The notes under the pieces: model-generated
Database searches by the model: none
Told to the model about the DNA's origin: nothing
The model's input: the letters and a program-made list of their open reading frames with translations, nothing else
Program-made: the position numbers and the translations under genes
Shown here: piece by piece, positions 3,884 to 53,924 of the stretch
Layout of the letters: each line of letters starts with the position of its first letter
Position numbering within the stretch: position 1 is the first letter of the stretch
DNA from: Octopus bimaculoides
Taxonomy: Eukaryota
DNA: 64,000 bases
Assembly: GCF_001194135.2 (NCBI RefSeq)
Contig: NC_068995.1
Location: forward strand, 42,990,024 to 43,054,023
Direction: 5' to 3'

Positions 3884-4263
3884 TGTTGGCGCTCCGTCGC
3901 TTACGACGTCGAGGGTTCCAGTTGATCTGATCAACAGAACAGCCTGCTCGTGAAATTAACGTGCAAGTGGCTGAGCACTCCACAGACACGTGTACCCTTA
4001 ACGTAGTTCTCGGGGATATTCAGCGTGACACAGTGTGACAAGGCTGACCCTTTGAATTACAGGCACAACAGAAACAGAAAGTAAGAGTGAGAGAAAGTTG
4101 TGGTGAAAGAGTACAGCAGGGTTCACCACCATCCCCTGCCGGAGCCTTGTGGAGCTTTAGGTGTTTTCGCTCAATAAACACTCACAACGCCCAGTCTGGG
4201 AATCGAAACCGCGATCCTATGACCGCGAGTCTGCTGCCCTAACCACTGGGCCATTGCGCCTAC
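3884..4263 (-). mobile_element. tRNA-derived SINE, family B1, full length with 11-bp TSD
   Basis: Minus-strand head aggcgcaaTGGCCCAGTGGttagggc...GGTTTCGATTCCcag (A and B boxes). TSD catctcttcat at 3873-3883 and 4264-4274. Near-identical copy at 34884-35267. Confidence 0.9.
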
Positions 4264-5569: not shown

Positions 5570-6402
5570 GGTACAAGACCTGAAATTCTTTGCGAGATGA
5601 TAGGTCGATTACATCGACTTTCCCAGTGTTTCACTGGTGCTTAATTTATCGACGCCTGAAGGCTGAAAAGCACTTTCAACCTCAACGGAATTTGAACTCA
5701 ACGTAGCGACAGGCGAAATAAAGCTAAGCATTTCGCCTGGCACGCTAATGATCCTGCCTGCTCGCTGCCTTACGAAAAACAAATAACCCATTCTACTATG
5801 GACACACGGCCTGAAATTTTGAGGGAGGGGGCCCAGTCGATTACATCGATTCCTAGTGTTTCACTGGTGCTTAATTTATAGACCCCGGAAGGATAAAAAG
5901 CAGAGTCGACCGCAACGGAATTTGAACTCAGAACGTAGCGACAGACGAAATAACGCTAGGCATTTCGTCTGGCGTGCTAACGCTAGGCATTTCGTCTGGC
6001 GTGCTAACGCTAGGCATTTCGTCTGGCGTGCTAACGCTAGGCATTTCGTCTGGCGTGCTAACGATCCTGTCATCTTGCCGCCTTAGGCAAAACAAATAAT
6101 GAAATGCAGAAAAGAACATAATTGGGGGAAGTTAAATAAGCTCTTAATTAAAATATTATATTAATATAACATTGTTTTAAACTATAGAAACATATCGAAA
6201 TGACATATTTTCTATACAAAACAGGGAGAGGGCCAGTCGATTAGATCAACCCCAGTACGCAACTGATCCTTAATTTATCGACCTCGGAAGGATGAAAGGC
6301 AATGTCGACTTCAGCGGAATTTGAACTCAGAGAGTAAAGACAGACGAAATACTACTAAGCATTTCGCCCGGCGTGCTAACGTTTCTACCAGCTCTCCGCC
6401 TT
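5570..6402 (-). mobile_element. Three head-to-tail copies of tRNA-derived SINE family A (5570-5772, 5787-6088, 6220-6402)
   Basis: Shared head ggcggcgagctggcagaatcgttagcacgccgggcgaaatgc, B box gagttcaaattcc and core gcctttcatcctttcggggtcgataaattaagtaccag (resembles the Nin/Deu SINE domain, from memory). Middle copy has TSD aaaacaaataa (5776-5786, 6089-6099). Confidence 0.9.
5951..6058. repeat. 27-bp perfect tandem repeat x4 inside a SINE-A head
   Basis: taacgctaggcatttcgtctggcgtgc starting at 5951, 5978, 6005 and 6032, with no spacers. Confidence 0.97.
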
Positions 6403-9699: not shown

Positions 9700-10205
9700 A
9701 TTGAACTTTTGACAATTGGTCTTGATATGTTTACGACCCCATAACGTAGCGCTTCGGCCAAAGGGACCTATAGAATAAGTACTAGATTTAAAAAGTAAGT
9801 CCTGGGCTTTATTTCATTCGACAGAAACCCGTGAAGGCCATGCTCCATCATTTTTCAAAATATTTTTATGCGCGCTTTTAAAGACTAGCCAGGCTCATGG
9901 GCCCGCTTTCCCGGTTTAATGGCGTATGTGTTCCCTCCACCTGGACGAGATGCCAGTCCATCGCAGCGTTACTAAAGAAACAGTGAGAGGAAGTTGGGGA
10001 GAAAGAGTACAGCAGAGGTCACCATCACCCCCTGCCGGAGCCTCGTGGAGCTTTAGGTGTTTTTACTCAATAAGCATATACAACGCCCGGTCTGGGAATC
10101 GAAACCTCCATCCTCCGCCCGCGAGACCGCTGCCCTAACCACTGGGCCATTGCGCCTCCCGTGCTCCACCATGGCGTCAGTCAAATGACCGAAACAAGTA
10201 AAATG
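9700..10205 (+). mobile_element. 3' half of SINE family C, interrupted by the B2 SINE
   Basis: gtttacgaccccataacgtagcgcttcggc...gaataagtact...gtcctggg...gaaggcca|gtgctccaccatggcgtcagtcaaatgaccgaaacaagtaaaa matches the family C tails at 55650-55830 and 60360-60545. Confidence 0.8.
9852..10160 (-). mobile_element. tRNA-derived SINE family B2 (B head with a different, V-domain-like 3' module)
   Basis: Head and body match B1; the 3' module is ctgcgatggactggcatctcgtccagg. TSD tgctccaYcat at 9841-9851 and 10162-10172 with one mismatch. Confidence 0.85.
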
Positions 10206-12139
10206 ATTCATCTAATTATTATAAAATTAACATGCATCTTAGTAGACAATCATTGTAATAAAATACTTTTTAGCCATCGTTTGTTTAATATGAAGTAATC
10301 ACTTAGAATTTTTAACATTGTGCACGTATCTCAGTTACGATTCCATTTCGGGGTTTGCCATTGTTTGGCTCATAGTTTCAATCAGATGTGACCGTCGTTA
10401 GGTTATGATTAATATATTCATTGCCGAATCAGTAATTACATACTATTTTAAGTTCATACTATTTTATTGCATGATGAGCTTAAGTACCTTTGTTTATAGA
10501 TGCGTGTGTGTGTTTTTGTGTGTGAGTGAGTGTTTGTGTGTGAGTGTGTGTATGTGCTTGCGTGTATGTGTGTTTGCGTGTGTGTGTGTGCGCGTATCAA
10601 TGAGCTTATATATCTACGTATATATTTATATTACGTATGTATATATATATATGCATATATNNNNNNNNNNNNNNNNNNNNNNNNNNNNNNNNNNNNNNNN
10701 NNNNNNNNNNNNNNNNNNNNNNNNNNNNNNNNNNNNNNNNNNNNNNNNNNNNNNNNNNNNNNNNNNNNNNNNNNNNNNNNNNNNNNNNNNNNNNNNNNNN
10801 NNNNNNNNNNNNNNNNNNNNNNNNNNNNNNNNNNNNNNNNNNNNNNNNNNNNNNNNNNNNNNNNNNNNNNNNNNNNNNNNNNNNNNNNNNNNNNNNNNNN
10901 NNNNNNNNNNNNNNNNNNNNNNNNNNNNNNNNNNNNNNNNNNNNNNNNNNNNNNNNNNNNNNNNNNNNNNNNNNNNNNNNNNNNNNNNNNNNNNNNNNNN
11001 NNNNNNNNNNNNNNNNNNNNNNNNNNNNNNNNNNNNNNNNNNNNNNNNNNNNNNNNNNNNNNNNNNNNNNNNNNNNNNNNNNNNNNNNNNNNNNNNNNNN
11101 NNNNNNNNNNNNNNNNNNNNNNNNNNNNNNNNNNNNNNNNNNNNNNNNNNNNNNNNNNNNNNNNNNNNNNNNNNNNNNNNNNNNNNNNNNNNNNNNNNNN
11201 NNNNNNNNNNNNNNNNNNNNNNNNNNNNNNNNNNNNNNNNNNNNNNNNNNNNNNNNNNNNNNNNNNNNNNNNNNNNNNNNNNNNNNNNNNNNNNNNNNNN
11301 NNNNNNNNNNNNNNNNNNNNNNNNNNNNNNNNNNNNNNNNNNNNNNNNNNNNNNNNNNNNNNNNNNNNNNNNNNNNNNNNNNNNNNNNNNNNNNNNNNNN
11401 NNNNNNNNNNNNNNNNNNNNNNNNNNNNNNNNNNNNNNNNNNNNNNNNNNNNNNNNNNNNNNNNNNNNNNNNNNNNNNNNNNNNNNNNNNNNNNNNNNNN
11501 NNNNNNNNNNNNNNNNNNNNNNNNNNNNNNNNNNNTATATATGTATATCTTTCTGTGTGTGCATGTACGTGTGTCTATACACCGATGCACATATTCATAT
11601 ATATATATATGTTTATATGTTTGTATGTATGTACATGTGTGTATTTCTCTTTGTGAATATAACCGTAATTCCTCTCTTTCTAAATGAGTGGTTATTAAGA
11701 GGTAAGAAATTTTAAGTTCTAAAAGAAACATACCAGAAAACTATCGTTTGTTTTGCCTTATTAGCTTTATATATGTACAATAAAACTAGGAATAACATAT
11801 TTTTGCAGACACTCATAAAATTTTGCAACATGTCTTATTCGAAATTTTTGTGTAGTAAAGGAGGAGGAGGAGGAGGAGGAGGGGCATGGAAACATGTGCT
11901 GAAACAGCTTGTCGCTGCATCCACAAGCCCTTGTCGTTCCCCTACAACTGGCAGTGGATGTCTTTGAACCATTCAGACGACATATCTCCAACCCATAGGT
12001 CTGTTTTCAGTAGTCGTTGCTCGTGAGAGTCTTACGACGTCGGAGTGCAAATCCTAGTTAAACCGCTTTTAGTAGCCTTTTAAGACAGACACATGAAACG
12101 TAGGGTCTATTTTTTTTACATGCTGGTACCCACACAGCA

Positions 12140-20970: not shown

Positions 20971-21053
20971 GTGGCGAGATGAGAGAATCGTTAGCACACC
21001 GGGCGAAATGCTTAGTGGTATTTCATCCGTCTTTCCGTTCTGAGTTCCAATTC
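20971..21053 (+). mobile_element. SINE-A head ending at the B box, joined directly to a LINE
   Basis: gtggcgagatgagagaatcgttagcacaccgggcgaaatgcttagtggtatttcatccgtctttccgttctgagttccaattc, followed immediately by LINE coding sequence. Confidence 0.85.
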
Positions 21054-22645
21054 AGGAAAGCAAAAGCTGGGTGTGTATTCACAACCCGCCAACAAAAAGT
21101 CAATCATTTGTTATTCATGGATGAGCTCAATCTTTATGGTAAAGATGAAGGCCAAGTCAGTTCCCTCGTTGACACGGTGTATAGCGTCAGTGCTGATATC
21201 GGAATGGAGTTCGGACTGAGAAAATGTGGTGTGCTAGTCTTGAAGAGAGGTAAAATCAAATGCATGGACGGGCTAACGATACCGTCGGGGGAGGTTATGA
21301 AGCAGATAGAAGAGACGGGCTATAAGAAGTTGGGGATTTTGGAAATGGATAAATTAATGGAGAAAGAAATGACAGAAAAATTTAAGGTATAGTACTTGCG
21401 TAGACTGAGGCTAATCCTAAAGTTGTAACTACATGGACGGAATAAGATCGAAGCTATCAACACCTGGGCGGTTTTACTCCTTAGATATGGAGCAGGAGTA
21501 CTCGCATGGACAGTAGAGGAACTAAGCAGGTGAGACAGAAAGACAAGGAAGTTGCTAACTAGATATGGGTCACTTCACCCAAAAAGTGACACAGACACAC
21601 TGCATGTACCAAGAAAAAGGGGGTGAAGAGGACATATTGGATACGAACACAGCATTAGAGCAGAATAAAACAACATAGCATGGTATGTAAAAAATGCCAC
21701 AAAGCCGCTATTATTTGAAGTAAGAAGGTCAGGCTTGTGTAGGATGAAAGATTGCAAAGATAAAGCACTGTACAAGAAATTGCAAACGAATGAAACTGAA
21801 AATAGGTGAGTAAAAAAAAGAATGCATGGTCAATTTCAAAGGGATGTTGAAGATAAGACAGACAGAGAAAAAAGATAGCTGTGGATGACTAAAAGTGGTT
21901 TAAAACCGGAAACAGAGGCTTTAATCTGTGCTGCCCAAGATCAAGCACTAAGAACAAACTACATAAAATACAGAATAGACAACAGAGCAGAAAGTGATAA
22001 GTGCAGAATCTGTGGACAAAACGGAGAAACCGTATGGCATATTACCAACCAATATACGCCACTAGCCCAGAAGGAATATAAGAGACGCCACAACAATAAA
22101 GCAAGGCTCGTCCATTAGACACTTTGCAAAATGTACGAATTTCACAGACCAAAAATTGGTACAACCACAAACCTAAAGGCATCATCGAAAATGGAAATGC
22201 CAAGATATGGGATTTTATGATTCAGTGCAACCATGAGATAAAGAATAGGAAGCCGGACATAGTCTTAATTGAGAAAGAAAATAAACTATGCTGGATCATA
22301 GATATAGCATGCCCAGCTGACAACAAGGTATTCGATAAGGAAGAAAGACAGGTCGAGAGATATGACAGGTTAGCTTGGGAGGTAAAGCAGTTGTGGTCGA
22401 TGAAAAAGGTAGCAGTAGTACTAATAATTGTCGGAGTCCTAGGAACAGTGGGCAAGAATATTGAGAAGTACATGGAACAATTAGGGGCTGCAATAAGTGT
22501 GGAGCACTTGCAGAAAGCAGCACTGCTTGGAACCGCTCGAATACTCCGGAAGGCGCTCGAAAAATAGGACGAGTTACCTTAGTTCGCTGGTATTGAACAG
22601 CTGACACTGTAATACATCTCCAGCATTAGAAGCTGAGCAAAGGCA
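21054..22645 (+). mobile_element. 5'-truncated R4/Dong-like non-LTR retrotransposon (RT end, CCHC knuckle, RLE), pseudogenised
   Basis: KVNHLLFMDEL (YxDD-type motif), DIGMEFGLRKC, LKPETEALICAAQDQALRTN, KCRICGQNGETVWHI, KRRHN, WDFMIQC...RKPDIVL...IIDIACP (PD..D), GTARILRKAL*, then a short UTR and (TAA)n. Stops and frameshifts present. Confidence 0.93.
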
Positions 22646-22687
22646 GTAATAATAATGATAATAATAATAGTAATAATAATAATAATA

Positions 22688-22720
<33 letters not shown>

Positions 22721-22766
22721 GTTATTGTTGTTGTTGTTGTTATTGTTATTATCATTATTGTTATTA

Positions 22767-22798
<32 letters not shown>

Positions 22799-22859
22799 GT
22801 TATTGTTGTTGTTGTTGTTATTGTCATTATCATTATTGTTATTATCATTATTATTATTA

Positions 22860-22902
<43 letters not shown>

Positions 22903-41792: not shown

Positions 41793-41852
41793 AAATATAC
41801 AATATATATATTGTTAGGGACTTAAAAACGATAAAACCTTTTATCGGATAAT

Positions 41853-41953
41853 TCTTTCTTTATTGCCCACAAGGGGCTAAATATAGAGGGGACAAACAAG
41901 TACAGACAAAGGGATTAAGTCGGTTAGATCGACCCCAGTGCGTAACTGGTACT
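41853..41953 (-). mobile_element. SINE-A 3' part with alternative tail (A2)
   Basis: Sense agtaccagttacgcactggggtcgatctaaccgac (SINE-A core), then ttaatccctttgtctgtacttgtttgtcccctctatatttagccccttgtgggcaataaagaaagaa. Left TSD at 41832-41852. Confidence 0.88.
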
Positions 41954-42572
41954 NNNNNNNNNNNNNNNNNNNNNNNNNNNNNNNNNNNNNNNNNNNNNNN
42001 NNNNNNNNNNNNNNNNNNNNNNNNNNNNNNNNNNNNNNNNNNNNNNNNNNNNNNNNNNNNNNNNNNNNNNNNNNNNNNNNNNNNNNNNNNNNNNNNNNNN
42101 NNNNNNNNNNNNNNNNNNNNNNNNNNNNNNNNNNNNNNNNNNNNNNNNNNNNNNNNNNNNNNNNNNNNNNNNNNNNNNNNNNNNNNNNNNNNNNNNNNNN
42201 NNNNNNNNNNNNNNNNNNNNNNNNNNNNNNNNNNNNNNNNNNNNNNNNNNNNNNNNNNNNNNNNNNNNNNNNNNNNNNNNNNNNNNNNNNNNNNNNNNNN
42301 NNNNNNNNNNNNNNNNNNNNNNNNNNNNNNNNNNNNNNNNNNNNNNNNNNNNNNNNNNNNNNNNNNNNNNNNNNNNNNNNNNNNNNNNNNNNNNNNNNNN
42401 NNNNNNNNNNNNNNNNNNNNNNNNNNNNNNNNNNNNNNNNNNNNNNNNNNNNNNNNNNNNNNNNNNNNNNNNNNNNNNNNNNNNNNNNNNNNNNNNNNNN
42501 NNNNNNNNNNNNNNNNNNNNNNNNNNNNNNNNNNNNNNNNNNNNNNNNNNNNNNNNNNNNNNNNNNNNNNNN

Positions 42573-43181
42573 GGTGGTTGTATTCGAACCACGCTATCTT
42601 TCACTTTCATCATTTTTTAATATTTTATGTAGTCTAACTTGTTCGTCGACAGCTGCCGGGTTCGACCCCTAGCTGCCAACGCAAAACTTTTTTTTTCCTT
42701 TCTCGCCTGCTCAGTCTGGATGCTAGGCGCATCGATAATCCTTTTGGTCACAATACTTTCTGACAAAGTTGAGAAATCTTCTTGTGAAAGCTCTGACGAG
42801 CTTTCCGATACGTCTCCAAATATTTAATACATCCTGCTGTGCACTTTGGTAACGGGGGAATTACAAATTCTTTTTTTCAGGGGAATCCACTGGTTTTTCA
42901 CTTGTAGTTGGCTCCTCGCCAGACAACAGATCTTTCGTCTCACTAGACATTTCTGTGCCAACGTTAGGCCTCTCTCTAGACGTCATTCTTCCCCCCCAAC
43001 GGGGGAATGAACAAACGTGTGCTTTCTACAAGCACTTAGTGTTTTCAAATAAAAACTCCAACAGTTAGAATTTCAACAGAAATTGCAGTTAGTAAAGGAG
43101 TAGTTATTATAAATATTAACACTAATAACCAGCAATTTTCACCACGAACACACGTGCGACGCGTAACCAACAAACTCACAG
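42573..43181 (-). mobile_element. Insert 2: 5' UTR and frameshifted ORF start of a retroposon, continuing into an N-gap
   Basis: Starts after ggtatttcgtct (43182-43193). ATG at 42986 gives MTSRERPNVGTEMSSETKDLLSGEEPTTSEKPVDSPEKK; a later frame reads FGDVSESSSELSQEDF...KEKKSFALAARG, resembling an ORF1 N-terminus. Confidence 0.55.
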
Positions 43182-43193
43182 AGACGAAATACC

Positions 43194-45043
43194 AATTTCT
43201 TTATTACCCACAAGGGGCTAAACACAGATGGGACAATACACACATGCGGGGACAATTAACACATGATAGAATGGAACAATGAAATTAAACAATGATGATG
43301 GGACGGGCACCCCAGCCCCACCCCGGGGCGGCCGCGTTATTTCAATTATTTCAACAGTTCTTAATAGTTCCTTTCACAATCTTCGATATTTCTTTTCAAA
43401 ATTATCTCAATAATTTATCCAAAATAAAACTACTCAGCGTTTTCTATAATCTTATTTCCTCGTAGTTCACCACTGGAGCGCTGGGTTTGAAATTCACCTC
43501 GGGCCCCAGTGGGTTTATNNNNNNNNNNNNNNNNNNNNNNNNNNNNNNNNNNNNNNNNNNNNNNNNNNNNNNNNNNNNNNNNNNNNNNNNNNNNNNNNNN
43601 NNNNNNNNNNNNNNNNNNNNNNNNNNNNNNNNNNNNNNNNNNNNNNNNNNNNNNNNNNNNNNNNNNNNNNNNNNNNNNNNNNNNNNNNNNNNNNNNNNNN
43701 NNNNNNNNNNNNNNNNNNNNNNNNNNNNNNNNNNNNNNNNNNNNNNNNNNNNNNNNNNNNNNNNNNNNNNNNNNNNNNNNNNNNNNNNNNNNNNNNNNNN
43801 NNNNNNNNNNNNNNNNNNNNNNNNNNNNNNNNNNNNNNNNNNNNNNNNNNNNNNNNNNNNNNNNNNNNNNNNNNNNNNNNNNNNNNNNNNNNNNNNNNNN
43901 NNNNNNNNNNNNNNNNNNNNNNNNNNNNNNNNNNNNNNNNNNNNNNNNNNNNNNNNNNNNNNNNNNNNNNNNNNNNNNNNNNNNNNNNNNNNNNNNNNNN
44001 NNNNNNNNNNNNNNNNNNNNNNNNNNNNNNNNNNNNNNNNNNNNNNNNNNNNNNNNNNNNNNNNNNNNNNNNNNNNNNNNNNNNNNNNNNNNNNNNNNNN
44101 NNNNNNNNNNNNNNNNNNNNNNNNNNNNNNNNNNNNNNNNNNNNNNNNNNNNNNNNNNNNNNNNNNNNNNNNNNNNNNNNNNNNNNNNNNNNNNNNNNNN
44201 NNNNNNNNNNNNNNNNNNNNNNNNNNNNNNNNNNNNNNNNNNNNNNNNNNNNNNNNNNNNNNNNNNNNNNNNNNNNNNNNNNNNNNNNNNNNNNNNNNNN
44301 NNNNNNNNNNNNNNNNTATGTCCAGTTTGTCCTCGTTAGGCAGCTCCAGTGTCTCCGGTATGTCACTGTAAACTTTCTGACTTGCTATAAAAAGCACATT
44401 CAATCCATACCCCCAGCAATTTATTTGTTGGGTTCTGCTTATCATAATTATCCTTACATCTTCTCCTTCTCTTTCAGGAAAAACTGCTGCCATTACCCAT
44501 TCCAACTCTATTTTCGGTGGGATCCTACCCACTCTAATCCACGCTGGACGTCTACCCAACTTACTGGGAAAGAGCATCCAATTTCCATTGGCTAGTATTT
44601 TATTGGCGTATTTTTTTGCTGCCTCCTCCGATACAAATGTTATTTCTACAGATGCCTATGTCTTGCCTCTTGTAAAAAACAACACATCTTCTTGGAATTC
44701 CTTCAAACACTCCTCCTTCGTTCCACTCTCTATTCTTTTATTTTTCCTTGGAAAGGATTTATATTCCACGACTCCAATTTCCATTTTCGTCTTTTCCTCC
44801 TCTGATGGGGACAACTTTACGTTTGGCCCCTCCTTCTTTATATTTTTCAATTTTCTCAGCCATGTCTTCATTCCAAGGTATTTCATATTGCTTCAGCAGG
44901 CCTGGGACGACGGAGGCTCGACTACCCGCCGCTGTTGTATACGTCTTCATGTTCTCCATCTCAGCAACGCCCACCAAAAAATAGTGGTGTTATACTAAAA
45001 AAATCGCAGCGAGTAATAACACGTCCGACCAGTAAACTCCCGC
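43194..45043 (-). mobile_element. Insert 1: about 1.85-kb retroposon encoding an ORF1/gag-like (RRM-like) protein, no ORF2 visible
   Basis: Frame KSFPRK...FFTRGKT*ASVEITFVSEEAAKKY...LFPSKLGRRPAWIRVGRIPPKIELEWVMAAV...IPETLELPNEDKLDI, then a 798-N gap, INPLGPEV...EEIRL*, a G-rich tract (43300-43336) and tail ttagccccttgtgggtaataaagaaat. Confidence 0.75.
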
Positions 45044-45105
45044 CAGACGAAATAGCGCCAAGCATTTCGCCCGGTGTGCTAACGATTCTGCCAGGTCGCC
45101 GCCTT
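45044..45105 (-). mobile_element. SINE-A 5' head, interrupted before the B box
   Basis: aaggcggcgacctggcagaatcgttagcacaccgggcgaaatgcttggcgctatttcgtctg. Right TSD at 45105-45125. Confidence 0.92.
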
Positions 45106-45869
45106 AAAACCTTTTACCGGATAATGTTAAGTTAAACAGACAGTTTTTCATACTGCGCTGTAAGATCAGGATGAAGTCCATTGTCAAAATGGGGGTAGCT
45201 AGGTTTTAATAGCCAAATTGTGAAACTCTAAAAAAATTGGCTATACCTCAGCAAACCTTTATAAGCAGAGATAATTGTACCCCAGTTTTTTTTTTGTGAC
45301 AGCTTTTTTAATTTTTCTGTGAGACAAGTTTCAATTGGATTCTGGAAGCTATGACTGTCAGTTTAGTTTATGCACTTTGTGCTTGGTATTAGGCATTTAT
45401 GGTATTACATTATGCTCCAGGAATTCGCCAGAACTTTTTGATCGTCAGTTTTAAAATACTTTGTGTCACATCGTGGTGAGTAAAAAAAAATCTCTTCTGT
45501 TATATTATAATATTTATGTGAATTTTGAACCCTGCATTTGTGGAAGGTTGTGTAGTAATTTTGCTAGCTATTTTCTGTTTTGATAAATGTTAAAATTTGT
45601 ATATATAGCTAAATGGTGTATGAATTTAAGTTGTTCATGTAGCCAATTTTTGTATTAGACAACTAACCGTAAATTTTGTCTAATGGTTAGTCAGCATGTT
45701 TGTATGAAGTAGTTTTGTGTGAATTTAAAACAAAGTAGAATATTTGTTTGACAATTTAATTTTTTAACTATAATTATTGATGTAGTCTGGCAGCCGTTTT
45801 GAGTCACGAAGGTTTAGTTTAAATGGTTGCTTTGACATTAGATTTATTTATGCTTAGGTCGAAGGTTCG

Positions 45870-48240: not shown

Positions 48241-49153
48241 ATTCAAGGCAAGTAGTACGAAAGTTCAACTACCTCTCTCATGACACCAAATTTAGTAGGT
48301 AAAATTAAATTTCATAAACAGGAATACCGAAGCGCACGGGACAAGACAGCAACAGAACATCCAAAGTGTGGCAAAGTAAAATCCAAGTTTCACCATAATT
48401 TTCCTAGGGACCACAAATACTAAAGTATTTGTAACAGGTCTACAATTAAGTGTTCCTACTCTGGAATGCCAACTTTAGCATCCATTATTGCCTCTTTAAA
48501 TAGGAATAAAGTAAATAAGATATGCGAATGTACGCCACAGAGAAACCCTGTTTCAAATAAAACCAACTGTAAACCACACGACGATGGTGGAACGGGCTCT
48601 TCATTCCCTCGGATTATGCCTAAATCTGAGAATGAGATAAGTGGAATGGTTGATAAGAATAAATTTCTGAGGGCGGTTAATAATGTTGGAAATGACTTTA
48701 AGGGTGGCCGTAAAGAATTATGTAATTGTAGGTACCCTTCTTTATGTCCTCTTGGCGGACTTTGTTTGTCCACAAACGTAGTGTATAAATGTGTAGTAAG
48801 AGCCGAGGACAAACAGAATAAGTTTTATATTGGAAGTTCAGTGAATTTTAAAGCCAGGTATAGGGCGCACATGAGTTCCTTTTCTAATGAGAAATATTAT
48901 AATTCCACAACGCTCGCCTCTTACCTGCATGACCTCAAGAGGAGGAATAAGAAGTACTATCTTGAATGGTCAATCTTATCTAGAACCCCCCAATTTAAGG
49001 CTAATATTAGCAAGTGCTTATTATGCATTAGGGAATCCCTTTCCATTCTTAGGTCTTTTGGGCCGAAAACCTTGAATAAGTTTATCGAGGTAATTCCTTT
49101 TTGCAATCATAAATTTTCCTCCACCTTCCTAAAACTATATAAAAATAGGAATA
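48241..49153 (+). mobile_element. Penelope-like element 3' region: RT end, Cys-rich linker and GIY-YIG endonuclease
   Basis: HNFPRDHKY*SICNRSTIKCSYSGMPTLASII, CNCRYPSLCPLGGLCL, NVVYKC...FYIGSSVNFKARYRAHMSSF, WSIL, KCLLCIRESLSI. The frame is open from 48466 to the gap. Confidence 0.92.
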
Positions 49154-49987
49154 NNNNNNNNNNNNNNNNNNNNNNNNNNNNNNNNNNNNNNNNNNNNNNN
49201 NNNNNNNNNNNNNNNNNNNNNNNNNNNNNNNNNNNNNNNNNNNNNNNNNNNNNNNNNNNNNNNNNNNNNNNNNNNNNNNNNNNNNNNNNNNNNNNNNNNN
49301 NNNNNNNNNNNNNNNNNNNNNNNNNNNNNNNNNNNNNNNNNNNNNNNNNNNNNNNNNNNNNNNNNNNNNNNNNNNNNNNNNNNNNNNNNNNNNNNNNNNN
49401 NNNNNNNNNNNNNNNNNNNNNNNNNNNNNNNNNNNNNNNNNNNNNNNNNNNNNNNNNNNNNNNNNNNNNNNNNNNNNNNNNNNNNNNNNNNNNNNNNNNN
49501 NNNNNNNNNNNNNNNNNNNNNNNNNNNNNNNNNNNNNNNNNNNNNNNNNNNNNNNNNNNNNNNNNNNNNNNNNNNNNNNNNNNNNNNNNNNNNNNNNNNN
49601 NNNNNNNNNNNNNNNNNNNNNNNNNNNNNNNNNNNNNNNNNNNNNNNNNNNNNNNNNNNNNNNNNNNNNNNNNNNNNNNNNNNNNNNNNNNNNNNNNNNN
49701 NNNNNNNNNNNNNNNNNNNNNNNNNNNNNNNNNNNNNNNNNNNNNNNNNNNNNNNNNNNNNNNNNNNNNNNNNNNNNNNNNNNNNNNNNNNNNNNNNNNN
49801 NNNNNNNNNNNNNNNNNNNNNNNNNNNNNNNNNNNNNNNNNNNNNNNNNNNNNNNNNNNNNNNNNNNNNNNNNNNNNNNNNNNNNNNNNNNNNNNNNNNN
49901 NNNNNNNNNNNNTGAGCACTTCTTTTACAGCCTTGTATAAATTCCTGGTTTTCTAATACAAAACTGTTAATATTGAATAATATATAC

Positions 49988-51665: not shown

Positions 51666-51899
51666 CTCTAATTTGTTTTACTAGTTTTGTCTATTTCTGA
51701 ATCGACAAAGATATCCGATATTTTTTCTTAACTTTAGCAGCCGTCATCAATGATTTCCTTTCTCTTTTTATTCGTTTCGTAGTTGCCTGAGGTAAAACAT
51801 GCTCGAATTTCAAATGTTATTATTGAAAAGAATCCGCTCGAAAGCGTCAGGTTATTTAGATACCTCGGAATTACACTAAAATTTAGGAGTACTCTTGAT

Positions 51900-52545: not shown

Positions 52546-53924
52546 CATAGCTACTTTTATTTTTAAAGTTGTTTTCTTTCTATCGATTTTTTATTTAAAT
52601 CTACTCCTTCAAACTCATAAGTCGAAGTTGATGCGAGTGGCCATCACATACGTTCGACATTGAACACATCTCTTAAGAGTTCATAAAGCAAATTCCTGCA
52701 AAAAATGTTAATTCTAGAAGCTTGTAACGAGGCTGTATTGTATGAGAGACACAGGCTATAGTTTCTCGCCGCTTGTGATTTTAGTTTTAACGCATGCGCG
52801 CGCGCACGCACACACACACACACACACATATTTTAATGCGTTTCCCTCACAATTTTGGCAGTCCACTCCAAGACTGTTTTAGTCTTTTCTCTAACATTCA
52901 CCCCGGTTTTGTTATTGAAACATCGAGTAATATCTCCATTTTCCTCACAAACCGTCGTCTTTATTACCATCACATCTGCTTTTTGTTTTTATTAACTCTT
53001 GTTTGGTCAAGAGAAAAATAAATCCCCAAAGACTCGTGCGAGAATCACTTTCATGACAAAATCTAAAAGAAAAGAGACGCTATATAATCGGTATACAGGG
53101 TAGAACGAGTAACTTCAAAACCCATTAATCGCACCCTACTTTTCATTAATCGCACTGGCAAATGAAAAGTACTTGGGTTAATGTTGGTCTTGATCTAATG
53201 TTTACAAATATATGTTGTAAATAATCCATGACATGATCCCTTTTGATCATTGCTTTACGCATTCTGATTCTTTTGGTGATGTTTCCTATTGTAAATCCAT
53301 ATTCGCTATTAACCAGACTATAAAATTTACCCTTTCGCAATAATATCACTTCATACTACTACAGTGTTTCAACTTATATGATCGTCATCATTCTTTGAAC
53401 ATTACCATAAATCCAGCTCTAACTTATTTTACTAGTTTTGTCGATTTCTGCATCGACAAAGATTTCCGATTTTTTTTTAACTTTGGCAGCCGTCATCAAT
53501 GATTGCCTTTCTCTTTTTACTCGTTCATCTTTCAACAACGTCAATTGATATTTTTCTGCTATGCTTTTTGTTCGCCCGATTAAGTAGCTCTGTTGCAGGT
53601 TTCCATTATTGTCTTCCATTTGTTATTCTTCTCCGTACTTGCACATTTGAACCTCCCAACGATGTTGCAAATATATTTTTCTTTCCTATAATAATAGTGT
53701 GTTTTGTCATACATGGGTAGTGTTAATACGAATTCCCCTTTTATTTGATGCGTAAAACATACATAGGTACACGCACACATACACGCATGCACGCACGCAC
53801 CTATACAGTCACATATATACATATGTACGGACGTACAAACATACTATTTACATACATATGTGTGTGTGTCCGTCCGCGCGCGTTTCTGTGTATGTAATAC
53901 CGTAACTGATTTATTGGTATTAAC

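What the first reader, a model, noticed from the sequence alone, without database searches (positions are those of the whole stretch)
41832..45125. SINE used as a sequence-specific landing pad by tandem retroposons that share its tail
Seen: (1) taaaaccttttatcggataat (41832-41852) and taaaaccttttaccggataat (45105-45125) form a 20-21 bp TSD with one mismatch, enclosing a SINE-A head at one end and a SINE-A core+tail at the other, so this is one SINE stretched from about 0.2 kb to 3.25 kb. (2) The head stops at ctatttcgtctg (45044), between the A and B boxes. (3) Insert 1 ends with aataaagaaat and is followed by a re-created target, tggtatttcgtct (43182-43193), after which unrelated insert 2 begins, so two different elements used the same site in the same orientation. 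(4) The SINE's tail is homologous to insert 1's tail. Known: Tx1-clade LINEs insert site-specifically and in tandem into multicopy targets (Tx1D transposon, U2 snRNA, tRNA arrays, 5S, microsatellites), and SINEs borrow LINE 3' ends for mobilisation. Inference: a closed loop in which a LINE lineage amplifies a SINE, thereby creating its own safe-harbour targets, and inactivates each one by separating the Pol III A and B boxes. I know of no description of this in cephalopods but cannot check the literature here.
Basis: partly seen in the sequence, partly recalled or inferred. Interest (0 to 1): 0.9.

Follow-up and report, generated by a model that had tools for sequence, protein, structure and literature searches.

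The report
Retroposons nested at one SINE-head site
One octopus SINE has been split at a fixed spot in its tRNA-like head by two retroposons in tandem, and related loci suggest that a family of L1/Tx1-like elements prefers a short motif found in that head, so this looks like a variant of known target-preferring LINE behaviour rather than a new kind of system.

Summary
On the minus strand, a 21-bp duplication (20/21) brackets a SINE head, then element B, then a regenerated 13 nt of the head (TGGTATTTCGTCT), then element C, then the SINE core and tail. The two N gaps hide C's 3' end and about 70 nt of the SINE.

B is one element of about 1.55 kb. It carries only an ORF1-like gene, 85-87% identical to Octopus bimaculoides A0A0L8HJ83, so it cannot move on its own. 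Its 45-nt tail with a small hairpin is shared with the SINE and with a 5.28-kb LINE in O. vulgaris whose ORF2 resembles L1.

The same junction (tail followed by GGTATT.CGTC of a SINE head) recurs in O. vulgaris. Related elements have duplications or 3' flanks containing TTCGT(CT).

Other relatives sit in (ATT)n repeats or in another repeat, and this SINE itself landed at an unrelated site. So I read this as integration with a preference for a motif that abundant SINE heads happen to carry. I do not read it as SINE-specific homing or a closed loop. Reverse-transcriptase template switching at the head hairpin is not excluded. C is unclassified, and Tx1 membership is plausible but was not tested by phylogeny.

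The parts
45105..45125 (-). Target-site duplication, copy next to the SINE head (ATTATCCGGTAAAAGGTTTTA in SINE sense)
   Evidence: Matches 41832-41852 at 20/21. It is the only isolated 21-mer repeat of this kind in the window.
45044..45104 (-). SINE-A head (tRNA-derived), ending ...GCTATTTCGTCTG, which is the 3' arm of a 10-12-bp hairpin
   Evidence: Aligns with seven other SINE heads in the window. It is 51/60 identical to the complete O. vulgaris SINE-A. Hairpin.
44317..45043 (-). Element B, 5' part: 84-nt 5' UTR (45043->44960) and ORF1-like codons 1-219, with one frameshift and one stop
   Evidence: 188/221 identical to residues 1-219 of P0012, O. bimaculoides A0A0L8HJ83.
43519..44316 (.). 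Assembly gap inside element B. About 471 nt of ORF (residues 220-376) are expected, not 798.
   Evidence: P0012 co-linearity; gap list.
43194..43518 (-). Element B, 3' part: last 24 codons (43518->43447), stop, 250-nt 3' UTR, and a 45-nt tail with hairpin GCCC[CTTGT]GGGT ending AATAAAGAAAT
   Evidence: 20/23 identical to P0012 residues 377-399. Tail is 40/45 identical to the SINE tail and 90% identical over 40 nt to the L008 LINE 3' end. Hairpin.
43181..43193 (-). Regenerated piece of the SINE head, (T)GGTATTTCGTCT(C), sandwiched between B and C
   Evidence: The same tail|GGTATT.CGTC junction occurs in L007.
42573..43180 (-). Element C, 5' part (starts CTGTGAGTTTGTTGG). Only a 41-codon ORF; unclassified.
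   Evidence: No other copy in the window and no homology to any fetched locus or protein. Its 5' motif G(T/G)GAGTTT is shared by eye with B, L004, L006 and L008.
41954..42572 (.). Assembly gap. It hides C's 3' end, any second regenerated target, and about 70 nt of the SINE (B-box region).
41853..41953 (-). SINE-A core (shared with other SINE subfamilies) plus SINE-A tail ending AATAAAGAAAGAA
   Evidence: It is 88/99 identical to L007 SINE-A positions 131-228.
41832..41852 (-). Target-site duplication, copy next to the SINE tail
27680..27853 (+). Comparator: a different short retroposon with the same tail, sitting in a (TATC)n/(ATGT)n array and not in a SINE. Its 3' flank is GTATTTATCC.

Best explanation
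What is there. A SINE-A copy inserted at ATTATCCGGTAAAAGGTTTTA and made a 21-bp duplication. Two retroposons later entered its head at the same place and in the same orientation.

What moves them. Both belong to, or are moved by, a cephalopod L1/Tx1-like LINE lineage.
- The lineage's RNAs end in a conserved ~45-nt tail: a 4-bp hairpin with loop CTTGT, then AATAAAG...
- SINE-A carries this tail.
- So do ORF1-only 'half-LINEs' such as B, and full 5.3-5.6-kb LINEs.

How the site is chosen.
- The machinery starts target-primed reverse transcription preferentially at a nick just 5' of a (G)GTA(T/G)TTC(G/C)T-like motif.
- It cuts the other strand 12-16 nt downstream, which duplicates the motif.
- The octopus tRNA-derived SINE head carries a perfect copy, GGTATTTCGTCTG, as the 3' arm of its hairpin. 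Abundant SINE heads are therefore frequent landing sites.
- Each hit regenerates the site, which allows tandem arrays separated by 13 nt.

Shown: the anatomy, the shared tail, B's identity, the existence of an autonomous relative, the recurrence of the junction, and the motif in other duplications.

Inferred: the order of events, the endonuclease as the source of the preference, and the loss of Pol III activity in the split SINE.
For: - Anatomy and duplication.
- B is one ORF1-only element. Its intact relative P0012 models as tandem RRM-like domains and has a CX2CX..H..C knuckle.
- The tail is shared by the SINE, B, a third element and the L008/L006 LINEs. Stem changes are compensatory.
- The autonomous relative has ORF2 with Exo_endo_phos (weak, E=0.006, below the curated cut-off), RVT_1 and zf-RVT. 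It aligns to human L1 ORF2p over 728 aa at E=1e-61. PMC13282606 lists 13 recently active L1-Tx1 families in O. vulgaris.
- Recurrence: in L007 a SINE-A tail is followed by A+GGTATTCCGTCGGTCTGAGTTCAAATTCC, a second SINE.
- L004 has the duplication GCTGGGTTCGTCTAGC/GCTGGGTTCGGCTAC.
- In L009 a tail is followed by GTTAGTTCGTGA and then the next element. In L010 a tail is followed by GTAGTTCCTTGTC.
- Motif test, leaving out the discovery junction: 4 of 9 junctions match the site at 7/12 or better (binomial P=0.002). One matches at 10/12, against a null of 2e-4.
- Three different ORF1-only families share one site in a homologous repeat.
Against: - Only ten independent tail junctions were available, and only two are SINE heads.
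- SINE-A in the window and the L006, L007:7281 and L008 copies have flanks that do not match the motif; L006 and L007:7281 lie in (ATT)n. The preference is therefore loose, or differs between sublineages.
- With a short core motif, mass action on abundant SINE heads could explain the single extra SINE-head hit (P about 0.24 at an assumed 3% share).
- The L007 dimer has no second head upstream. It is flanked by a 12/15 duplication-like match. That fits a single chimeric cDNA, or homology-mediated joining, better than a simple staggered cut.
- The two 13-nt copies in the window differ at 2 of 13 positions.
- C's 3' end and tail are unread.
- No endonuclease or RT lies in the window.
Confidence: 0.55

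Rival explanations
1. cDNA chimeras made by reverse-transcriptase template switching. RT copying a SINE RNA stalls at the stable head hairpin and jumps to the 3' end of another RNA that carries the same tail (B, C or SINE-A). It later returns to a SINE RNA. The whole composite would then be one insertion flanked by one duplication, with no DNA-level target preference.
For: The junction positions are the two feet of the hairpin's 3' arm. The L007 SINE-A + SINE(from GGTATT) dimer lacks a second head and is bracketed by a 12/15 match right at both ends. The window holds a SINE-head/5'-truncated-LINE fusion with no SINE remainder downstream (20975-22900). All partners share the tail that the RT would bind. 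Template jumping by LINE RTs (R2, L1/U6 chimeras) is established knowledge.
Against: It needs four jumps in one event. Two of them must land precisely after ...TCGTCT and re-copy the same 13 nt. It cannot explain L004, which is a clean insertion in non-SINE DNA with a 15-16-bp duplication containing TTCGTCT. It also cannot explain the motif-like flanks in L009 and L010.
Confidence: 0.2
2. A Tx1-type LINE recognises the SINE as such, through a long specific target. It amplifies that same SINE to create its own safe harbours and disables each one (a closed loop).
For: Two junctions in the window and one in O. vulgaris fall at the same nucleotide of the SINE head. SINE-A shares the LINE tail. Tandem copies with a sandwiched duplication match what is described for target-specific Tx1 elements and SINEU-3 (PMC4494074).
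Against: Close and distant relatives with the same tail lie in non-SINE targets. SINE-A itself is dispersed: the window copy is at an unrelated site. The motif sits in a head common to SINE subfamilies with other tails, and the target SINE in L007 is one of those. No test of transcription was possible.
Confidence: 0.15
3. Coincidence or artefact. These are ordinary nested insertions in a repeat-rich region, with the all-repeat middle contig scaffolded into the wrong locus. The two junctions would then not belong to one SINE.
For: Contigs end inside repeats, the gap lengths are only estimates, and the 946-bp middle contig has no unique sequence. The 13-nt piece differs from the local head at 2 of 13 positions.
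Against: The head|B junction is contiguous with unique flank and the duplication copy. B5 and B3 fit one 404-aa protein in the right order and orientation across the gap. The tail|GGTATTTCG junction exists on a single contig whatever its placement, and it recurs in another species.
Confidence: 0.07

Closest known systems
Target-specific Tx1-group LINEs and their SINEs (Tx1L in Tx1D of Xenopus; Tx1-Mar and SINEU-3 in Mariner-N4_AMi of crocodilians; Kibi/Koshi in microsatellites) - Kojima 2015, PMC4494074
   Same: These are APE-type L1-group LINEs that insert at a fixed site of an interspersed multicopy element or a microsatellite. Dependent SINEs share the target with varying strictness (90%, 23% and 13% in that paper). 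Tandem copies sandwich a target-site duplication. Here some relatives also sit in (ATT)n.
   Different: The preferred carrier here is the head of a tRNA-derived SINE, including a SINE with the LINE's own tail. The specificity looks looser, a roughly 10-nt degenerate motif. Clade membership was not tested by RT phylogeny. The evidence is a handful of loci, not a genome count.
HAL1 ('half-L1') non-autonomous LINE derivatives of mammals (my own knowledge: Bao and Jurka 2010)
   Same: Element B and its relatives (P0012, P0013, P0015, P0026) keep the 5' UTR, an ORF1-type gene and the LINE 3' end but have no ORF2. They must use a partner's endonuclease and RT.
   Different: The ORF1 type differs: RRM-like domains plus a CCHC knuckle, not the coiled-coil/RRM/CTD type. 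There are several diverged families in octopods. The tail is a specific stem-loop rather than poly(A).
Stringent-type LINE/SINE pairs that share a 3' stem-loop (my own knowledge, e.g. eel UnaL2/UnaSINE; Ohshima and Okada 2005, listed in the reference list of PMC9115989)
   Same: About 45 nt of 3' end are conserved between SINE, half-LINE and LINE. The small hairpin is kept through compensatory changes.
   Different: Recognition by the RT was not tested. The stem has only 4 bp.
U6/L1 and similar chimeric retrocopies made by RT template switching (my own knowledge; also discussed for SINEU in PMC4494074)
   Same: A small-RNA-derived 5' piece is fused in the same orientation to a LINE-type copy inside one duplication. 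The L007 dimer and window 20975-22900 look like this.
   Different: The classical chimeras switch to the 3' end of the small RNA. Here the switch points would be internal, at a hairpin, and would have to be used repeatedly.

Membership tests
Tx1 clade (L1 group) non-LTR retrotransposon | ORF2 with an N-terminal APE endonuclease and an L1-type reverse transcriptase | tested here: met
   Not present in the window. It is present in the tail-sharing relative L008 (O. vulgaris): RVT_1 6.5e-31, zf-RVT 1.7e-8, and a partial Exo_endo_phos match (E=0.006, below the curated cut-off). It aligns continuously to human L1 ORF2p over 728 aa at E=1e-61. In L006, ORF2 starts MANLRIGCLNVRGL.
Tx1 clade (L1 group) non-LTR retrotransposon | RT domain groups with Tx1 references in a phylogeny | not tested
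The only indirect support is that PMC13282606 annotates 13 recently active L1-Tx1 families of about 5.4 kb mean length in O. vulgaris.
Tx1 clade (L1 group) non-LTR retrotransposon | Type I ORF1 (RRM plus CCHC knuckle), reported as consistent with Tx1 in PMC5203782 | tested here: inconclusive
   The CCHC motif is visible in P0012, P0013 and P0031. Pfam zf-CCHC reaches only E=0.003 in P0013, below the cut-off. The AlphaFold model of P0012 resembles tandem-RRM proteins (best Foldseek E=4.6e-4, mean pLDDT 69.6).
Tx1 clade (L1 group) non-LTR retrotransposon | Insertion at one specific target sequence with a fixed duplication, often in tandem | tested here: inconclusive
   Two junctions in the window plus L007 fall at one SINE-head nucleotide. 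L004 has a TTCGTCT duplication. L004, L005 and L007 share a site. L009 and L008 are tandem. The motif enrichment is P=0.002-0.007 on 9 junctions. Several relatives lie elsewhere.
tRNA-derived SINE with a LINE-derived tail | tRNA-related head with Pol III A and B boxes | tested here: inconclusive
   ARAGORN and Rfam find no tRNA. A-box-like TGGCAGAATCG and B-box-like GAGTTCAAATTCC are seen by eye in eight copies. In this copy the B-box region is in the gap.
tRNA-derived SINE with a LINE-derived tail | 3' end homologous to the 3' end of an autonomous LINE | tested here: met
   The SINE tail is 85% identical to the L008 LINE 3' end over 41 nt, and the B tail is 90% identical over 40 nt. The hairpin is conserved with compensatory changes.
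tRNA-derived SINE with a LINE-derived tail | Dispersed copies flanked by target-site duplications | tested here: met
   A 21-bp duplication here. A complete SINE-A is present in O. vulgaris L007.
ORF1-only non-autonomous LINE derivative (HAL1-like) | A single ORF1-type gene, no ORF2, and LINE 5' and 3' ends | tested here: met
   B equals P0012 residues 1-219 and 377-399, followed by a stop, 250 nt and the tail. The L004 element is 1,731 nt with one 379-codon ORF, bounded by a duplication. The C-terminal F..D.GPLG motif is also present in the LINE ORF1 regions of L008 and L006.

The most novel reading that the evidence does not exclude
An octopod L1/Tx1-like LINE lineage, together with its half-LINEs and its own SINE, has evolved real sequence-specific homing to the tRNA-derived head shared by the genome's most abundant SINEs. 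SINE amplification would then keep supplying harmless landing sites. Each landing would split the Pol III promoter and regenerate the site for further tandem entries.
Probability: 0.25. Interest if true: 0.7.

Novelty: new variant of a known kind. Interest (0 to 1): 0.5.

Why it matters
If a genome-wide count confirms the preference, this would be a case where a LINE family's favoured target is the head of a SINE. That includes the SINE the family itself mobilises.

- That would link SINE expansion to LINE 'safe-harbour' supply in a genome where SINEs and LINEs each make up more than 10% (PMC13282606).
- It would also explain SINE dimers and SINE-LINE composites in octopus assemblies, and why contigs break at these places.
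- It would give a defined 12-13-nt substrate for testing a cephalopod LINE endonuclease.

If only a short motif plus sheer SINE abundance is at work, the finding is the octopus counterpart of L1 and Alu landing in A-rich parts of Alu, which is ordinary.

Tried and rejected
- Searching for other genomic copies by exact ORF identity. None of 10 window ORFs is in the protein collection.
- Word-indexed protein search with B's ORF gave no hit, although a 90% relative exists. The same search with a family alignment gave only 3 hits, swamped by low-complexity words.
- Scans of metagenome, prokaryote-genome and viral contigs for the SINE head gave nothing. No raw octopus DNA was reachable that way.
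- LINE C-terminal ORF hits on ENA contigs (L001-L003) come from another organism without this SINE.
- Pfam on B and C ORFs: nothing. Rfam and ARAGORN on the region: only microsatellite look-alikes.
- Similarity between the 5' ends of B and C is not significant (p about 0.07). Only the short G(T/G)GAGTTT motif is shared by eye.
- C against the 5' regions of related LINEs, and blastx: nothing.
- The idea that the 50-nt spacer in the L008 tandem array is a sandwiched target was rejected. The same segment lies inside the L006 LINE, which is bounded by (ATT)n on both sides.
- The two L007 copies of one half-LINE are an inverted segmental duplication that includes flank, not two insertions.
- L011-L016 are one and the same ~1.7-kb Logan contig recovered from several runs and gave no junctions.
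- Sequence strings of the SINE were not found in the paper library or in the supplements of PMC9115989.


Full report
**What the window is.** The window is an AT-rich scaffold with 14 N gaps, many microsatellites and at least eight copies of one tRNA-derived SINE head. The closest protein to anything in the finding is Octopus bimaculoides A0A0L8HJ83. All further relatives are octopod: O. vulgaris, O. sinensis, Argonauta hians.

**Checking the observation.** Read on the minus strand, the region has this order:
- duplication copy ATTATCCGGTAAAAGGTTTTA (45125->45105)
- SINE head (45104->45044), ending GCTATTTCGTCTG
- element B, 5' part (45043->44317)
- gap
- element B, 3' part (43518->43194), ending TAGCCCCTTGTGGGTAATAAAGAAAT
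- TGGTATTTCGTCT(C) (43193->43181)
- element C, 5' part (43180->42573)
- gap
- SINE core and tail (41953->41853), ending TAGCCCCTTGTGGGCAATAAAGAAAGAA
- duplication copy ATTATCCGATAAAAGGTTTTA (41852->41832)

The 20/21 duplication is exactly 21 nt long. It is the only isolated repeat of that quality within 5 kb in the window, once tandem repeats, SINE-SINE matches, the tail match and one repeated segment are set aside.

The head aligns with the other SINE copies and stops where they continue with TCGCTACGTTCTGAGTTCAAATTCC. The break therefore lies between the A-box-like and B-box-like motifs. The downstream piece begins in SINE core that is shared with subfamilies carrying other tails, so it is SINE and not merely a LINE tail. 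Against a complete SINE-A later found in O. vulgaris, the head is 51/60 identical. The core+tail is 88/99 identical and maps to positions 131-228. The tails of the SINE and of B match at 40/45 positions.

**The gaps.** The program's warning was tested first for the B gap.
- A full HMMER search with B's reading frame found a 404-residue O. bimaculoides protein, P0012, at 90% identity.
- B's 5' contig covers P0012 residues 1-219 (188/221 identical, one frameshift, one stop). B's 3' contig covers residues 377-399 and is followed by a stop.
- The two contigs are therefore the two ends of one element, in the right order and orientation. About 471 nt are missing, where 798 N are written.
- This is the only independent support for placing the 946-bp all-repeat middle contig here.
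- The second gap hides C's 3' end, about 70 nt of the SINE, and the junction that would decide the mechanism. Nothing here can test it.

**What the inserts are.**
- B is about 1.55 kb: an 84-nt 5' UTR, one ORF, a 250-nt 3' UTR and the tail. There is no room for an endonuclease or RT.
- The intact protein has a CX2C...H...C knuckle, and relatives have a canonical CX2CX4HX4C. Its AlphaFold model (mean pLDDT 69.6) resembles tandem-RRM proteins, best Foldseek E=4.6e-4. Pfam sees only a weak zf-CCHC in one relative.
- B is thus an ORF1-only, non-autonomous 'half-LINE'.
- Several diverged families of this kind exist in octopods, 25-46% identical to each other.
- C has only a 41-codon ORF. It matches nothing that I could reach. 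It stays unclassified beyond a short 5' motif, G(T/G)GAGTTT, that B and the related elements also have near their 5' ends.

**The autonomous partner.** O. vulgaris locus L008 holds three tandem copies (99.1-99.6% identical to one another, the third 3'-truncated) of a 5.28-kb LINE.
- Its ORF1 belongs to this family.
- Its ORF2 carries RVT_1, zf-RVT and a weak partial Exo_endo_phos match. ORF2 aligns to human L1 ORF2p over 728 residues at E=1e-61.
- Its 3' end is 90% identical to B's tail over 40 nt and 85% identical to the SINE tail.
- O. sinensis L006 holds a second full LINE of the group with a related tail.
- Eight of nine tails keep a 4-bp stem with loop C(T)TGT just before AATAAA. Paired changes (C-G to G-C, G-C to A-T) occur between families. 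This is the usual signature of a 3' recognition element shared by a LINE and its dependants.
- A 2026 repeat annotation lists 13 recently active L1-Tx1 families in O. vulgaris, with a mean of about 5.4 kb per insertion (PMC13282606). Type I ORF1 variants are described as consistent with Tx1 (PMC5203782).
- Tx1 membership is therefore plausible. I could not run the RT phylogeny that defines it.

**Is the site preferred?** No octopus genome could be searched as DNA. The test therefore rests on about 190 kb: the window plus loci reached through family proteins. Ten independent tail junctions were found.
- The strongest is in O. vulgaris L007. A complete SINE-A ends ...GGGTAATAAAGAAAT and is followed by A and then GGTATTCCGTCGGTCTGAGTTCAAATTCCGCCGAGG. 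That is a second SINE, of a subfamily with another tail, starting at exactly the same nucleotide as the 13-nt piece in the window.
- L004 is a half-LINE in non-SINE DNA bounded by GCTGGGTTCGTCTAGC / GCTGGGTTCGGCTAC.
- In L009 a tail is followed by GTTAGTTCGTGA and then the next element.
- In L010 a tail is followed by GTAGTTCCTTGTC.
- The third tail in the window is followed by GTATTTATCC.
- Each flank was scored against GGTATTTCGTCT with a null drawn from the same DNA. The nine non-discovery junctions reach 10, 8, 7, 7, 6, 5, 4, 4 and 4 of 12. The null gives P(>=8)=0.014 and P(>=10)=2e-4. The binomial P is 0.002-0.007.
- The L004, L005 and L007 half-LINEs belong to three families but sit at the same site of a homologous repeat. 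Flank similarity has p<0.002 and p=0.008.

There is a real, if loose, target preference in this lineage, with a core near (G)GTA(T/G)TTC(G/C)T. The SINE head carries its best instance, as the 3' arm of a 10-12-bp hairpin.

- Members with the same tail also lie in (ATT)n (L006 LINE, L007:7281) and in other sequence (L008).
- SINE-A in the window landed at a site that does not match the motif.
- The motif belongs to a head shared by SINE subfamilies with other tails.
- In the window only about 3 of roughly 100 expected GGTAT sites are SINE heads (my estimate). One extra SINE-head hit among nine junctions is therefore not by itself more than a short-motif-plus-abundance model would give.
- The data support motif-preferring integration that often hits SINE heads. 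They do not support recognition of the SINE as such, nor a closed loop.
- Loss of Pol III activity in the split SINE is inference.

**The main rival.** The L007 dimer has no second head upstream, and a 12/15 match sits directly at both of its ends (shuffle P=0.045 before counting position). That is what a single chimeric cDNA would give: RT leaves the SINE RNA at the hairpin and continues on the 3' end of another tail-bearing RNA. It is also what homology-mediated joining between the two identical heads would give. The window also holds a SINE head fused to a 5'-truncated LINE with no SINE remainder downstream.

For the finding itself, template switching needs four jumps. Two of them must land at the same nucleotide and re-copy 13 nt. 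It cannot explain L004. I rank it second.

**Comparison with known systems.** The behaviour is closest to target-specific Tx1-group LINEs and their SINEs.
- These insert into DNA transposons, LTR elements, small-RNA genes or microsatellites.
- They form tandem copies that sandwich a duplication.
- Their dependent SINEs show weaker specificity than the LINE (PMC4494074).
- B resembles mammalian HAL1 in design (my own knowledge).

I found no description of a SINE head as the preferred target, nor of these octopus families. Repbase and Dfam could not be consulted.

**Verdict.** The best reading is a new variant of a known kind, resting on few loci and with the decisive junction unread.

Noticed in passing
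window 20975-22900 (+): A SINE head (about 80 nt, through the B-box-like motif) is fused directly to a 5'-truncated LINE. The LINE has RT motif FMDELNLYG, a 147-codon C-terminal ORF and a (TAA)n/(ATT)n tail. Microsatellites lie on both sides and there is no SINE remainder downstream. It looks like a template-switch chimera or a rearranged nested insertion.
   Followed up: partly
window 48466-49153 (+), running into gap 49154-49912: An ORF of at least 229 codons with a weak GIY-YIG nuclease match (Pfam E=0.003) and cysteine motifs upstream. It is possibly the endonuclease end of a Penelope-like or other GIY-YIG element.
   Followed up: partly
window 5942-6083 (-): One SINE copy has a 27-nt unit of its head (GCGTTAGCACGCCAGACGAAATGCCTA) repeated about four times in tandem. 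This is the hairpin's 5' arm region.
   Followed up: no
window 27680-27853 (+): A short retroposon with an unrelated C/T-rich body but the same ~45-nt tail, inside a (TATC)n/(ATGT)n array.
   Followed up: partly
L008 4445-19184 (O. vulgaris OX597840): Three head-to-tail copies of a 5.28-kb L1/Tx1-like LINE, 99.1-99.6% identical to the middle copy, abutting tail to 5' end. The third copy is cut at unit position 4198, which target-primed insertion alone would not produce.
   Followed up: partly
L004 9922-11652; L005 ~9920-11715; L007 ~9935-11771: Three different ORF1-only families (44-46% protein identity) sit at the same position of a homologous repeat. The L005 copy has lost its tail and is flanked by a ~75-bp direct repeat. 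The L007 copy's 3' part is duplicated in inverted orientation together with its flank.
   Followed up: partly
window 43519-44316: The N run is 798 long, but co-linearity with the intact protein predicts about 471 nt. The gap estimate is off by roughly 330 nt, or this copy carries an extra insertion.
   Followed up: yes
window 51676-51760 and 53427-53510: A direct repeat of at least ~85 nt, about 1.75 kb apart, with a few mismatches. It was not examined further.
   Followed up: no
window 29700-30200: A minisatellite with a unit of roughly 115-135 nt, rich in TCA/TCG/CCA triplets. It gives long serine/proline-like or aspartate/glycine-like ORFs on the two strands. It is probably not coding.
   Followed up: no
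The word-indexed protein search missed a 90%-identical O. bimaculoides protein that the exhaustive HMMER search found. Negative results from the indexed search should not be trusted for eukaryotic repeats.
   Followed up: yes
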